A stretch of DNA of 64,000 bases. Origin: Salpingoeca rosetta (taxonomy: Eukaryota; Protista; Choanoflagellata). Of the stretch, positions 48,603 through 50,695 are shown piece by piece; position 1 is the first letter of the stretch, and each line of letters starts with the position of its first letter. The position numbers were made by a program, and so were the translations under genes. The notes under the pieces are model-generated. The model was not told the origin of the DNA, made no database searches, and worked only from the letters and a program-made list of their open reading frames with translations. The stretch is taken from assembly GCA_033442325.1 (NCBI GenBank), contig JAWQFM010000005.1:1-64000 (forward strand), read 5' to 3'.

Positions 48603-50695
48603 ATGCGCAGTGTGGTGTTAGTGGTGGCCGCCGTGTTGGCGTGCTGCTGTTGTGGTGGCGGTGTTGGTGGCGGTGTTGGTGTTGGTGTTGTTGGAGCAAA
48701 ACCAGGCGTGATCACTGGCGCACAGCGCTTGGCGACAGACGCCAGCCTGCGACAAGCCACCCTCCAGGGTGTGTGTGTGCGTGTGTGTGTGTGTGTGTGT
48801 GTGTGTGTGTGTGTGTGTGTGTGTGTGTGTGTGTGTGTGTGTGTGTGTGTGTGTGTGTGTGTGTGTGTGTGTGTTCTAAAGCTCACAAGCTCACCAGCTC
48901 ACAATTGTCACACCCCTTCTTCTCTTCTCACCCCCCGCCCAACCAACCCCCACCAACCCCGACTCACCCGGCCTCCTCCTGGACAGGCCGCGTCGGCATC
49001 ATCTCAAACCCCACAGGCATCCTCAATAACTTGACGCATATCGTCGACTTTCTGCACACGGCACCCGATGTGCGTACGCACACAACACTTGCCTTCCTGC
49101 ACGTCAGCTTGACCGTGTTCCCCGCTCTGCATCACTGAAGCACGCTTCGTTGTCATGTCAGCTCATGCTCGCTCGCTGTGTCCACCGCTGCGTTTGCCCA
49201 GGTGAATCTGGTGTCCATCTATGGGCCCGAGCACGGCTTTCGTGGCGACCACCAGGCTGGACACGGCTCTGGCGACGTCTACACAGACAACCGCACTGGC
49301 CTCCCCGTCTACAGCCTCTACCGCAAATATGTGAGAGCCAGCGTGTATGCAAATGTGGGAACGTACATGTACATGACTGGGTGTCGCGTGCTTGGCTCAA
49401 GGTGCGAGTCCCTTTCAACGCTTGCGCTTCCACCCTTTCAATGCTTGCGCTTCCACCCTTTCAATGCTTGCGCTTCCACCCTGTCCTCCACACTGACACA
49501 CGTCTCCTCCCTACCCCCTCCCAACACACGCACGCACGCGCAGGGACCAGATTTGGCCAAGGTGCTGGAGGCCGAGAAGCTCGACACGCTGGTGTTCGAC
49601 ATCCAGGACGTGGGCTGCCGCTTCTACACGTACATCTGGACGCTGTGGGATGTGATGAGTGCGCTGCCCAACACCACCATCCCGCACCTTGTTGTGCTGG
49701 ACCGGCCAAACCCCATTGGGGCGAACATTGTGCAAGGGCCCGTGCTGGAGGAGGCATTCTCCTCGTTCATTGGCAGATACGCCATCCCACTCCGCCACGG
49801 CATGACCGTCGCAGAGCTCGCGACGTTGTTCGTCAGCGCACAGCGAAACGCATCAACATCGTTTTCACCACCATCAACATCCCCTTCATCGGCTTCAACT
49901 TCATCACCATCATCACCATCATCAGCATCAGCATCGTGGGGCGCGTCGTTGTCTACTGGCACACACGCGTTCAAGCTGACCACGGTGACAATGCTCAACT
50001 ATGAGCGCAGCATGCTGTACTCTGACACGCACGTGCCGTGGGTGCCGCCTTCGCCCAACATGCCCACGCTCAACACAGCGCTGGTGTACCCCGGGCTGGG
50101 CATCATTGAAGGGACGAACATGTCTGAGGGGCGCGGCACGACGTCCCCGTTCAACCTGTTTGGGGCGGGCTTCTTCAACTACACCTTCATCGACAGCCTG
50201 CACCAAGCAACCGCAGCCACAACCATCACAATGACCGCAGACCTGTCCCACCACAGCGCCACCACCACCACCACGAAGAACACCATTAGCAACAGCACCA
50301 CGAGCACCACCACGAGCACCAACACGAAGAACAGCGCAAAGCACAGCGGCAGTGATGGCGATGGTGATCTCTTTGCCGGCGCTGCTGTTCGGGAGGCGTA
50401 CTTTGTGCCCACCTTCTCCAAGTTTGCTGGCGATGTGGTCACGGGTGCCGAGCTGTATGTGCTTGACCCGAGCGTGTTCAATCCAATTGCCTGGGGCCTG
50501 GCGGTTGTGCAGGTTGGCCTGCGTGCCAGCCCAGCGTCCATGCAGCTGTTTGACGCAGACTTTGACCTGCACTTGGGTAACAACTCGACCAGGCTCATGC
50601 TCACGCGCGGGGATTCGATCCACGCCATCGTTGCTGCGTGGCAGCCGCCCCTCCAACGCTTCATGCACACCAGACAGCACTTTCTTCTCTACTGA
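48603..50695 (+). CDS. namZ: Secreted NamZ/YbbC (DUF1343) exo-beta-N-acetylmuramidase homolog, 4 exons
   Basis: Exons 48603-48768, 48987-49069, 49202-49330, 49544-50695 splice in frame. Motifs GRVGIISNPTG, YGPEHGFRG, TGLPVYSLY, DTLVFDIQDVGCRFYTYIWTL, VLDRPNPIG, IPLRHGMTVAELA, WVPPSPNMPT..ALVYPG..IEGTNMSEGRGTTSPF..FGA, FVPTFSKF, terminal R..FLLY*. Confidence 0.95.
49410..49482. repeat. 23-bp tandem repeat x3 in namZ intron 3
   Basis: CCCTTTCAA(C/T)GCTTGCGCTTCCA x3. Confidence 0.9.

What the first reader, a model, noticed from the sequence alone, without database searches (positions are those of the whole stretch)
48603..50695. Domesticated bacterial-type peptidoglycan exo-muramidase (NamZ/DUF1343) in a eukaryote
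Seen: a complete NamZ-family reading frame with three GT-AG introns (one with a host-type GT microsatellite), an N-terminal signal peptide and eukaryotic neighbours, so not contamination. Known: NamZ (B. subtilis YbbC, GH171) removes MurNAc from peptidoglycan sugars and is described mainly from bacteria. Inference: a horizontally acquired, secreted or phagosomal enzyme for digesting prey cell walls, possibly generating or destroying muropeptide cues.
Basis: partly seen in the sequence, partly recalled or inferred. Interest (0 to 1): 0.78.

Follow-up and report, generated by a model that had tools for sequence, protein, structure and literature searches.

The report
Choanoflagellate NamZ peptidoglycan exo-muramidase gene
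This is a real, four-exon Salpingoeca rosetta gene (PTSG_01581, annotated "YbbC") for a bacterial-type enzyme that clips N-acetylmuramic acid off bacterial cell-wall sugar chains; choanoflagellates acquired it long ago from bacteria, it probably helps digest prey, and a 2021 gene-transfer screen had already flagged it without discussing it.

Summary
Window 48603-50695 (+) holds a complete four-exon, three-intron (GT-AG) gene. Its exon-by-exon translations match the 509-aa NCBI protein "YbbC [Salpingoeca rosetta]" (PTSG_01581) exactly. It is a full GH171/NamZ protein: NamZ_N and NamZ_C domains, the putative catalytic Glu and Arg, and a fold like PDB 4K05/4JJA. It also has a hydrophobic N-terminal leader and extra N-glycosylation sequons. 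It is single-copy and sits on a 2.36-Mb host scaffold.

Orthologues occur in five more choanoflagellates from both orders. In the trees they and intron-bearing environmental eukaryotic contigs form one clade (98/91) inside an Actinomycetota-dominated part of the bacterial tree. This supports one ancient bacterium-to-choanoflagellate transfer, not a recent S. rosetta event.

It is not new as a fact. Matriano et al. 2021 list it as "FOREIGN" (Alien Index 177) in a supplementary table but filtered it out. NamZ transfers into ciliates are published.

The digestive role is inferred, not shown. The genome also has GH20 hexosaminidases, an AnmK-type kinase and a GKRP-type etherase candidate. My six-frame searches found no muramoyl-alanine amidase or classical lysozyme, and the amidase is what NamZ substrates require. 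RNA reads could not be obtained. Interest is moderate to low.

The parts
48603..48768 (+). Exon 1: start codon, hydrophobic leader (residues about 1-17), a Gly/Val-rich stretch encoded by a (GGTGTT)n/12-nt repeat, and the first helix of the mature protein. It ends with the first base of a split Gly codon.
48769..48986 (+). Intron 1, 218 nt, phase 1, GT...AG. It opens with (GT)53 at 48769-48874.
48987..49069 (+). Exon 2, residues 56-83, NamZ_N profile positions 1-24.
49070..49201 (+). Intron 2, 132 nt, phase 0, GT...AG. An environmental eukaryotic relative (L096) has a phase-0 GT-AG intron at the equivalent site, within one codon.
49202..49330 (+). Exon 3, residues 84-126, NamZ_N positions 28-67. 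It contains the GPEHGFRG motif.
49229..49231 (+). Codon of Glu93, the equivalent of the putative catalytic Glu92 of B. subtilis NamZ.
49331..49543 (+). Intron 3, 213 nt, phase 0, GT...AG. It is in frame and free of stops, and holds a 23-nt unit repeated 3.2 times at 49410-49482.
49544..50695 (+). Exon 4, residues 127-509 plus TGA. It holds the rest of NamZ_N (positions 77-202) and NamZ_C.
49862..49960 (+). Ser/Pro/Thr-rich insert 1 (about residues 233-265). It is lineage-specific, predicted disordered, and partly encoded by a 9-nt repeat.
50132..50134 (+). Codon of Arg323 in the invariant SEGRGTT motif, the equivalent of Arg279 of B. subtilis NamZ.
50246..50356 (+). Thr/Ser-rich insert 2 (about residues 361-397). 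It is specific to S. rosetta, predicted disordered, and encoded by a 12-nt repeat of 6.8 copies.

Best explanation
The locus is PTSG_01581, a functional nuclear gene of Salpingoeca rosetta encoding a GH171 (NamZ/YbbC/DUF1343) exo-beta-N-acetylmuramidase. A bacterial namZ, closest to Actinomycetota-type sequences, entered the choanoflagellate lineage before Craspedida and Acanthoecida diverged. The gene then acquired spliceosomal introns, host base composition, microsatellite-derived low-complexity loops and more N-glycosylation sequons, and it carries a secretory leader as B. subtilis NamZ does. It has been inherited vertically with losses in some species. Inferred mechanism: the protein enters the secretory/endolysosomal route and meets phagocytosed bacteria in the food vacuole, or is released. 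There it removes non-reducing-end MurNAc from peptide-free peptidoglycan glycan fragments, alternating with GH20 beta-hexosaminidases that remove GlcNAc. The freed MurNAc would be phosphorylated and then split by the GKRP-type MurNAc-6-P etherase into GlcNAc-6-P and D-lactate, so prey cell wall becomes carbon and nitrogen. Shown here: gene structure, family membership, conserved putative catalytic residues, fold, single copy, host context, distribution and phylogeny. Inferred: secretion or localisation, substrate, pathway coupling and expression in S. rosetta.
For: Identity: the exon-wise translations equal P0001. NamZ_N scores 159 bits and NamZ_C 120 bits. PDB 4K05 matches at E=8e-54 and 4JJA at 2e-45. 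The AlphaFold model has pLDDT 83 and pTM 0.81, and Foldseek gives target-normalised TM 0.87 to 4K05 and 0.83 to 4JJA. Active site: Glu93 in GPEHG and Arg323 in EGRGT are nearly invariant and invariant across 53 sequences. They map to Bs Glu92/Arg279 through a Priestia homologue at E85/R272, which is 7 residues shorter. Transfer: 7,939 of the 8,000 candidates scored were significant, and nearly all named proteins among the 120 listed are bacterial. In a profile search the only named eukaryotes were six choanoflagellates. In the careful ML tree the 13 eukaryotic rows form one clan (UFBoot 98 / SH-aLRT 91; core 12 rows 100/97). In the 68-row tree that clan lies inside an Actinomycetota-dominated half (SH-aLRT 95), separated at 100 from the Bacillota/Pseudomonadota/Verrucomicrobiota half. 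Integration: three GT-AG introns, (GT)53, GC3 0.73, and a 2.36-Mb scaffold with CRIB and WSC neighbours. Intron 2 is shared, within one codon, with an environmental relative. Relatives lie beside Arf, a PTP phosphatase and a split melibiase gene. Secretory route: all six choanoflagellate proteins start with a hydrophobic leader and carry 4-9 N-X-S/T sequons, against 1-3 in three bacterial homologues. Pathway: several GH20 loci; a three-exon AnmK gene, PTSG_04434; and a GKRP-type double-SIS gene, whose Naegleria and lancelet homologues are active MurNAc-6-P etherases. Precedent: NamZ acquired by ciliates and read as cell-wall or amino-sugar digestion.
Against: Characterised NamZ enzymes need peptide-free glycans. 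Six-frame searches of this genome found no Amidase_2/PGRP, Amidase_3 or CHAP, so the step that makes the substrate has no candidate. They also found no NlpC/P60, GH22, GH23, GH24, GH25, i-type lysozyme, GH73 or GH19. These searches score exon by exon and can miss short, intron-split domains. The GH22, i-type and GH19 searches had no positive control. The only GH3 gene is xylosidase/glucosidase-like, not NagZ. A MurNAc kinase is not identified: the NAGK-like hit is sub-threshold at 28 bits, and AnmK acts on anhydro-MurNAc. The donor phylum rests on moderate support, and the nearest bacterial row (L047) is a long branch. The OrthoMCL label 'Ureukaryote' implies homologues in other eukaryotes that I could not place in the tree.
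Confidence: 0.65

Rival explanations
1. The enzyme keeps the NamZ fold but has been re-purposed for something other than digestion. It might trim or inactivate bacterial glycan signals, act on a non-peptidoglycan sugar in the choanoflagellate's own theca or extracellular matrix, or release GlcNAc-MurNAc disaccharides as T. forsythia NamZ1 does.
For: GH171 members differ in specificity: TfNamZ1 is an exo-disaccharidase. No amidase or lysozyme partner was found in the genome. S. rosetta development is known to respond to bacterial molecules (PMC7971027). Two lineage-specific disordered Ser/Thr-rich loops were added.
Against: The putative catalytic Glu and Arg and nearly all family-invariant positions are retained. 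The downstream MurNAc route (AnmK, GKRP-type etherase) is present. No muropeptide cue is known for S. rosetta. The added loops are low-complexity, slippage-derived sequence, not new domains.
Confidence: 0.2
2. The gene is an ancient eukaryotic gene inherited vertically from the last eukaryotic common ancestor and lost many times, not a horizontal transfer.
For: Richter et al.'s OrthoMCL family for this gene is labelled 'Ureukaryote' in Matriano's Table S1, so homologues exist in at least one non-opisthokont. Ciliates also carry NamZ.
Against: In a search of a collection that includes EukProt, a profile of the eukaryotic clade recovered only choanoflagellates and unnamed environmental sequences ahead of more than 100 bacterial proteins. 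The clade is nested among Actinomycetota-type sequences. No metazoan, fungal or filasterean protein appeared, and Matriano found no metazoan hit at all. The ciliate copies were inferred to be separate prokaryote-to-ciliate transfers.
Confidence: 0.08
3. Bacterial contamination or an assembly artefact.
For: The best non-choanoflagellate matches are all bacterial, at 35-40% identity.
Against: Three spliceosomal introns, one holding a host-type (GT)53 tract. Host-like GC and GC3. The gene sits inside a 2.36-Mb scaffold next to CRIB and WSC genes. Orthologous poly(A)-transcriptome sequences from five other choanoflagellates are collinear across all three junctions.
Confidence: 0.01

Closest known systems
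Bacillus subtilis NamZ (YbbC), founding member of CAZy GH171 (PMC8054146)
   Same: Same two Pfam domains. The Glu of GPEHG and the Arg of EGRGT are conserved. It has an N-terminal secretion leader and a similar core length. Bacillaceae homologues are about 36-40% identical.
   Different: Here the gene is nuclear and spliced, with no murQRP-amiE-nagZ operon around it. It carries 9 N-glycosylation sequons and two disordered Ser/Thr-rich inserts. Activity is untested.
Bacteroides fragilis BF0371 (PDB 4K05) and BF0379 (PDB 4JJA), DUF1343 crystal structures
   Same: Sequence E-values of 8e-54 and 2e-45. The predicted fold superposes with target-normalised TM 0.87 and 0.83 (Rossmann-like N-domain plus alpha/beta C-domain).
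   Different: 25-28% identity, and the crystal structures lack the inserts.
Paramecium bursaria NAMZ (bioRxiv 10.1101/2024.09.14.613017) and NamZ of anaerobic APM ciliates (PMC13198582)
   Same: A NamZ gene of prokaryotic origin, with introns, in a bacterivorous protist, read as cell-wall or amino-sugar processing. In the APM ciliates it comes together with anmK and murQ.
   Different: A different eukaryotic supergroup and probably an independent transfer. No ciliate sequence appeared among the closest relatives here. I could not put them in one tree.
Tannerella forsythia NamZ1 and NamZ2 (bioRxiv 10.1101/2021.12.02.470905)
   Same: GH171 enzymes used to harvest MurNAc from other bacteria's peptidoglycan, a scavenging logic like that proposed here.
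   Different: They are periplasmic bacterial enzymes. NamZ1 releases disaccharides. Which specificity the choanoflagellate enzyme has is unknown.
Eukaryotic GKRP-type MurNAc-6-P etherases (Veiga-da-Cunha 2009, cited in PMC7052976; bioRxiv 10.64898/2026.05.08.723886)
   Same: Another bacterial-type peptidoglycan-sugar enzyme kept by bacterivorous eukaryotes. S. rosetta has a homologue that would act downstream of NamZ.
   Different: An unrelated fold (SIS), cytosolic, and widespread in eukaryotes including animals.

Membership tests
GH171 / NamZ (Pfam PF07075 + PF20732) | NamZ_N domain above the Pfam gathering score | tested here: met
   Exon 4 scores 159.1 bits and exon 3 scores 41.9 bits against a cut-off of 26.9. 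The hits are collinear across exons 2-4. The whole-genome scan gives the same result.
GH171 / NamZ (Pfam PF07075 + PF20732) | NamZ_C auxiliary domain | tested here: met
   120.2 bits against a cut-off of 25, in two stretches interrupted by insert 2.
GH171 / NamZ (Pfam PF07075 + PF20732) | Conserved glutamate at the end of beta-strand 2 (Bs Glu92, putative catalytic residue) | tested here: met
   Glu93 in GPEHGFRG is conserved in at least 90% of 53 aligned sequences. Its catalytic role rests on a homology model in PMC8054146, not on mutagenesis that I could find.
GH171 / NamZ (Pfam PF07075 + PF20732) | Conserved arginine of the C-domain pointing into the cleft (Bs Arg279) | tested here: met
   Arg323 in SEGRGTT is invariant in 53 sequences.
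GH171 / NamZ (Pfam PF07075 + PF20732) | Two-domain fold of the DUF1343 crystal structures | tested here: met
   The AF2 model has pLDDT 83.1. Foldseek E-values are 9e-28 to 4K05 and 6e-21 to 4JJA, with nothing else below 1e-2.
GH171 / NamZ (Pfam PF07075 + PF20732) | Exo-beta-N-acetylmuramidase activity on pNP-MurNAc or MurNAc-GlcNAc | not testable with these tools
   Needs recombinant protein.
Prokaryote-to-eukaryote horizontally transferred gene | The eukaryotic sequences form a clade nested among prokaryotic sequences | tested here: met
   One clan at 98/91, nested in the Actinomycetota-dominated half (95) opposite a 100-supported split. The root is not inferred, and the sampling covers only the nearest relatives.
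Prokaryote-to-eukaryote horizontally transferred gene | Absent from the recipient's wider relatives (animals, fungi, filastereans) | tested here: inconclusive
   None appear among the best 120 hits of two searches, and Matriano found no metazoan hit. The listings are truncated, and the 'Ureukaryote' label points to homologues in other eukaryotes that I did not see.
Prokaryote-to-eukaryote horizontally transferred gene | Physically integrated in the host genome and expressed | tested here: inconclusive
   Integration is met: introns, a microsatellite and host neighbours. Orthologues come from the transcriptomes of five other species.
Complete peptidoglycan-sugar digestion pathway (as in B. subtilis: amidase + NagZ + NamZ + MurQ) | A MurNAc-L-Ala amidase to make peptide-free glycans | tested here: not met
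   No Amidase_2, Amidase_3 or CHAP match in six-frame scans. Sensitivity is limited by introns.
Complete peptidoglycan-sugar digestion pathway (as in B. subtilis: amidase + NagZ + NamZ + MurQ) | An exo-GlcNAc-ase and a MurNAc-6-P etherase | tested here: inconclusive
   There is no NagZ-type GH3, but several GH20 loci could substitute. A GKRP-type double-SIS gene is present, but its activity is unknown.

The most novel reading that the evidence does not exclude
In my scans NamZ is the only recognisable dedicated peptidoglycan glycosidase in the S. rosetta genome. It may be the missing entry enzyme of a bacterial-type MurNAc catabolic route (NamZ, then a kinase, then the GKRP-type etherase) that the closest relatives of animals use to feed on prey cell wall. 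That would give a concrete ancestral job to the etherase from which animal glucokinase regulatory protein descends. It would also imply an undiscovered amidase or lysozyme class in choanoflagellates.
Probability: 0.25. Interest if true: 0.6.

Novelty: new member of a known kind. Interest (0 to 1): 0.36.

Why it matters
Choanoflagellates are the sister group of animals and live by eating bacteria, yet how they take apart peptidoglycan is essentially undescribed. This gene gives a specific, assayable enzyme for one step. S. rosetta is genetically tractable, so knockouts and tagging are feasible. Together with the AnmK-like kinase and the GKRP-type etherase, it suggests that a bacterial-style MurNAc salvage route was assembled in a eukaryote, partly by gene transfer. 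This parallels what has been reported for ciliates. The finding does not open a new category. The gene was already annotated and flagged as foreign, and NamZ transfer into protists is published.

Tried and rejected

2. Joined spliced model: I did not search it. Exons were searched separately by reference. Full-length work used the database protein P0001, which a search returned and which the exon-wise translations match exactly.

3. NagZ partner: the only GH3 hit in the genome lies in this same window (21705-22088). It is a multi-exon xylosidase/glucosidase-like GH3 next to a WSC domain, not NagZ. I rejected it as a partner and as a co-transferred gene.

4. Amidase and lysozyme partners: Amidase_2, Amidase_3, GH25, GH22, GH24, destabilase, SLT/GH23, GH73, CHAP, NlpC/P60 and GH19 were all negative. 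GH22, destabilase and GH19 had no positive control. Mukherjee & Moroz 2024 mention unpublished 'ch-type and unconventional' lysozyme-like genes in choanoflagellates. Absence is therefore not established.

5. MurQ proper: only weak SIS hits were found. They turned out to be a GKRP-type gene and a generic SIS protein.

6. MurNAc kinase: the BcrAD_BadFG/NAGK hit is sub-threshold.

7. Neighbour annotation: 18 of 20 long ORFs around the gene gave no Pfam hit. These are mostly spurious ORFs of GC-rich DNA.

8. Literature: no paper in the library mentions PTSG_01581, EGD78604 or F2TYD0 in its main text, and none links DUF1343 with choanoflagellates. One literature query timed out.

9. Ciliate and other protist NamZ sequences could not be fetched, so eukaryote polyphyly is inferred, not shown.

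Full report
WHAT IS THERE

The window is part of a 2.36-Mb scaffold of Salpingoeca rosetta: the top database hit to exon 4 is the 100%-identical NCBI protein 'YbbC [Salpingoeca rosetta]'. Reading the DNA gives a four-exon gene on the + strand:
- Exons: 48603-48768, 48987-49069, 49202-49330 and 49544-50695.
- Introns: three, of 218, 132 and 213 nt, all GT...AG, in phases 1, 0 and 0.
- Check against the database protein: the exon translations, taken one at a time, sit at residues 1-55, 57-83, 84-126 and 127-509 of protein P0001. The split codon g|gc supplies Gly56.
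- P0001 is the 509-aa NCBI/UniProt entry 'YbbC [Salpingoeca rosetta]', which is EGD78604 / PTSG_01581 / F2TYD0.

For full-length analyses I used P0001 itself, a sequence that the search tool returned.

Intron 1 begins with (GT)53. Intron 3 holds a 23-nt unit repeated 3.2 times.

FAMILY MEMBERSHIP

- Pfam matches are collinear across the exons: NamZ_N positions 1-24, 28-67 and 77-202, then NamZ_C.
- The only solved relatives are the two Bacteroides fragilis DUF1343 structures, 4K05 (E=8e-54) and 4JJA (E=2e-45).
- An AlphaFold2 model built on a 53-sequence alignment is confident (pLDDT 83, pTM 0.81). The exceptions are the N-terminal leader with its Gly/Val-rich region, and two stretches at 233-265 and 361-397.
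- Foldseek finds 4K05 and 4JJA at target-normalised TM 0.87 and 0.83, and nothing else of note.
- The paper that founded GH171 proposes Glu92, at the tip of strand 2, and Arg279 as the active-site residues of B. subtilis NamZ (PMC8054146). The equivalent Glu93 (GPEHG) and Arg323 (EGRGT) are present here. They are nearly invariant and invariant, respectively, across 53 homologues.
- The two low-confidence stretches are Ser/Thr/Pro-rich inserts. They are absent from bacterial homologues and largely specific to S. rosetta. They are encoded by 9-nt and 12-nt tandem repeats, so they came from the same slippage that fills this genome with microsatellites.

SECRETION

- All six choanoflagellate proteins begin with a short, strongly hydrophobic segment and have no other membrane-like stretch. 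They carry 4-9 N-X-S/T sequons, against 1-3 in three bacterial homologues.
- Two sequons (NLT near residue 70 and NRT near residue 113) recur in the craspedid species.
- B. subtilis NamZ is itself secreted.
- This fits a luminal or secreted protein, but no signal-peptide predictor or localisation data were available. Secretion remains an inference.

ORIGIN

The family is very large in bacteria. In the first search, 7,939 of the 8,000 candidates scored were significant, and nearly all named proteins among the 120 listed were bacterial.

Named eukaryotic hits are all choanoflagellates:
- Microstomoeca roanoka (56% identity to exon 4)
- Barroeca monosierra
- Salpingoeca infusionum
- S. kvevrii
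- the loricate Stephanoeca diplocostata

A further set of unnamed metagenomic proteins groups with them. Their contigs carry an Arf GTPase, a dual-specificity phosphatase or a melibiase split into pieces. One of them (L096) has a phase-0 GT-AG intron at the site of S. rosetta intron 2, within one codon, but lacks introns 1 and 3.

The trees give this picture:
- A careful IQ-TREE analysis (48 rows, LG+C20+F+G4 by PMSF) puts all 13 eukaryotic rows on one side of a branch (UFBoot 98 / SH-aLRT 91; core 12 rows 100/97). A long-branched Actinomycetota MAG is the weakly supported neighbour.
- A 68-row quick tree with more Actinomycetota and S. infusionum keeps the clade (96, or 98 with P0011 and L047). 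It places the clade inside an Actinomycetota-dominated half (95). That half is split at 100 from the Bacillota, Pseudomonadota, Verrucomicrobiota and Acidobacteriota sequences.
- The branching inside the clade is compatible with vertical descent. This rests on my recollection of the species tree, so treat it as a lead.

The simplest reading is one transfer from a bacterium into the choanoflagellate stem, followed by losses. Monosiga brevicollis, for example, does not appear among the hits.

The 'Ureukaryote' label attached to this family in Matriano's table shows that some other eukaryote carries a homologue. Ciliates do, and those copies were inferred to be separate transfers. I could not fetch those sequences. 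Polyphyly of eukaryotic NamZ is therefore inferred only from their absence among the nearest 120 relatives.

WHAT WAS ALREADY KNOWN

- Matriano, Alegado and Conaco (Sci Rep 2021, PMC7971027) list PTSG_01581 in Table S1 with PF07075, 509 aa, 3 introns, GC3 0.717, a best hit to Streptomyces (40.3%), no metazoan hit, Alien Index 177.1 and the designation 'FOREIGN'.
- Only genes gained on the Urchoanozoan stem were kept for their final 175 candidates. This gene was therefore dropped, and it is never mentioned in the text.
- No paper in the library names the gene.
- NamZ acquired from prokaryotes has been reported in Paramecium bursaria (bioRxiv 2024). [quoted passage not shown]
- The choanoflagellate case is thus a new, undiscussed member of a known kind.

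HOW IT PROBABLY WORKS, AND THE GAPS

Characterised NamZ enzymes remove non-reducing-end MurNAc, or GlcNAc-MurNAc in the case of TfNamZ1. They act only on peptide-free glycans and do not attack intact sacculi.

I scanned the whole 55-Mb genome in six frames for partner enzymes.

Found:
- several GH20 hexosaminidase loci;
- a three-exon AnmK gene, which is PTSG_04434, also 'FOREIGN' with Alien Index 189.7;
- a GKRP-type double-SIS gene, whose Naegleria and lancelet homologues are active MurNAc-6-P etherases (PMC7052976);
- a Glucosamine_iso-family gene.

Not found:
- Amidase_2, Amidase_3, CHAP, NlpC/P60, GH22, GH23, GH24, GH25, i-type lysozyme, GH73 or GH19;
- a NagZ-type GH3. The single GH3 hit lies 27 kb upstream in this window and is xylosidase-like;
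- a clear MurNAc kinase.

The sugar end of a digestion route is therefore plausible. The steps that would cut the sacculus and strip its peptides have no candidate.

These negatives are soft. The scan works exon by exon, and three of the families had no positive control. Mukherjee & Moroz 2024 allude to unpublished unconventional lysozyme-like genes in choanoflagellates.

The muropeptide-cue idea has nothing for or against it in these data.

VERDICT

The identification as NamZ/GH171 is secure. The bacterial origin is well supported, but it is ancient and shared across choanoflagellates. The digestive role is likely but untested. The gene was already annotated and flagged as foreign.

Noticed in passing
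window 21241-24504 (+): A multi-exon gene combines a WSC domain with a GH3 glycosidase (xylosidase/glucosidase-like motifs). It is interrupted by long GT/CA microsatellite introns. It is the only PF00933 hit in the whole genome, and it is not NagZ-like.
   Followed up: partly
G000:C11:629844-631736 (+) (loci L011-L013): A three-exon AnmK (anhydro-N-acetylmuramic acid kinase) gene, PTSG_04434. Matriano 2021 Table S1 lists it as FOREIGN (Alien Index 189.7, best hit a Planctomycetes protein at 47%). It is a second bacterial-type peptidoglycan-sugar enzyme in this eukaryote.
   Followed up: partly
G000:C2:1768792-1770120 (+) (locus L008): A gene of the glucokinase-regulatory-protein type with both GKRP SIS domains. 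It is a candidate MurNAc-6-phosphate etherase that would act downstream of NamZ.
   Followed up: partly
window 49331-49543: Intron 3 of the NamZ gene is 213 nt, in frame and free of stop codons; the mechanical ORF 49178-50695 reads straight through it. Retention would insert 71 residues between NamZ_N profile positions 67 and 77. The intron holds a 23-nt unit repeated 3.2 times at 49410-49482.
   Followed up: no
window 48653-48694, 49901-49935, 50248-50333: Short tandem repeats lie inside the coding sequence: a 6/12-nt Gly-Val repeat after the leader, and 9-nt and 12-nt Ser/Thr repeats. They encode the lineage-specific disordered stretches, which suggests that microsatellite slippage reshaped a transferred gene.
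   Followed up: partly
whole genome G000: Six-frame HMM scans found no classical lysozyme (GH22, 23, 24, 25, i-type), GH73, CHAP, NlpC/P60, or Amidase_2/3 in a bacterivore. Either these genes are missed because of introns, or choanoflagellates use unrecognised cell-wall hydrolases.
   Followed up: partly
L047 (Actinomycetota MAG, Centralia) and P0011 (locus L094): A long-branched bacterial NamZ from a 471-kb Actinomycetota MAG contig groups with the eukaryotic clade, next to the most divergent eukaryotic-contig sequence (the one beside an Arf gene). It could mark the donor lineage, or it could be long-branch attraction.
   Followed up: no
window 58993-59805 (+) and 42897-43421 (-): A CRIB/P21-Rho-binding domain exon, consistent with the WASP gene noted by another reader, and a WSC domain exon flank the NamZ gene within 10 kb.
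   Followed up: partly
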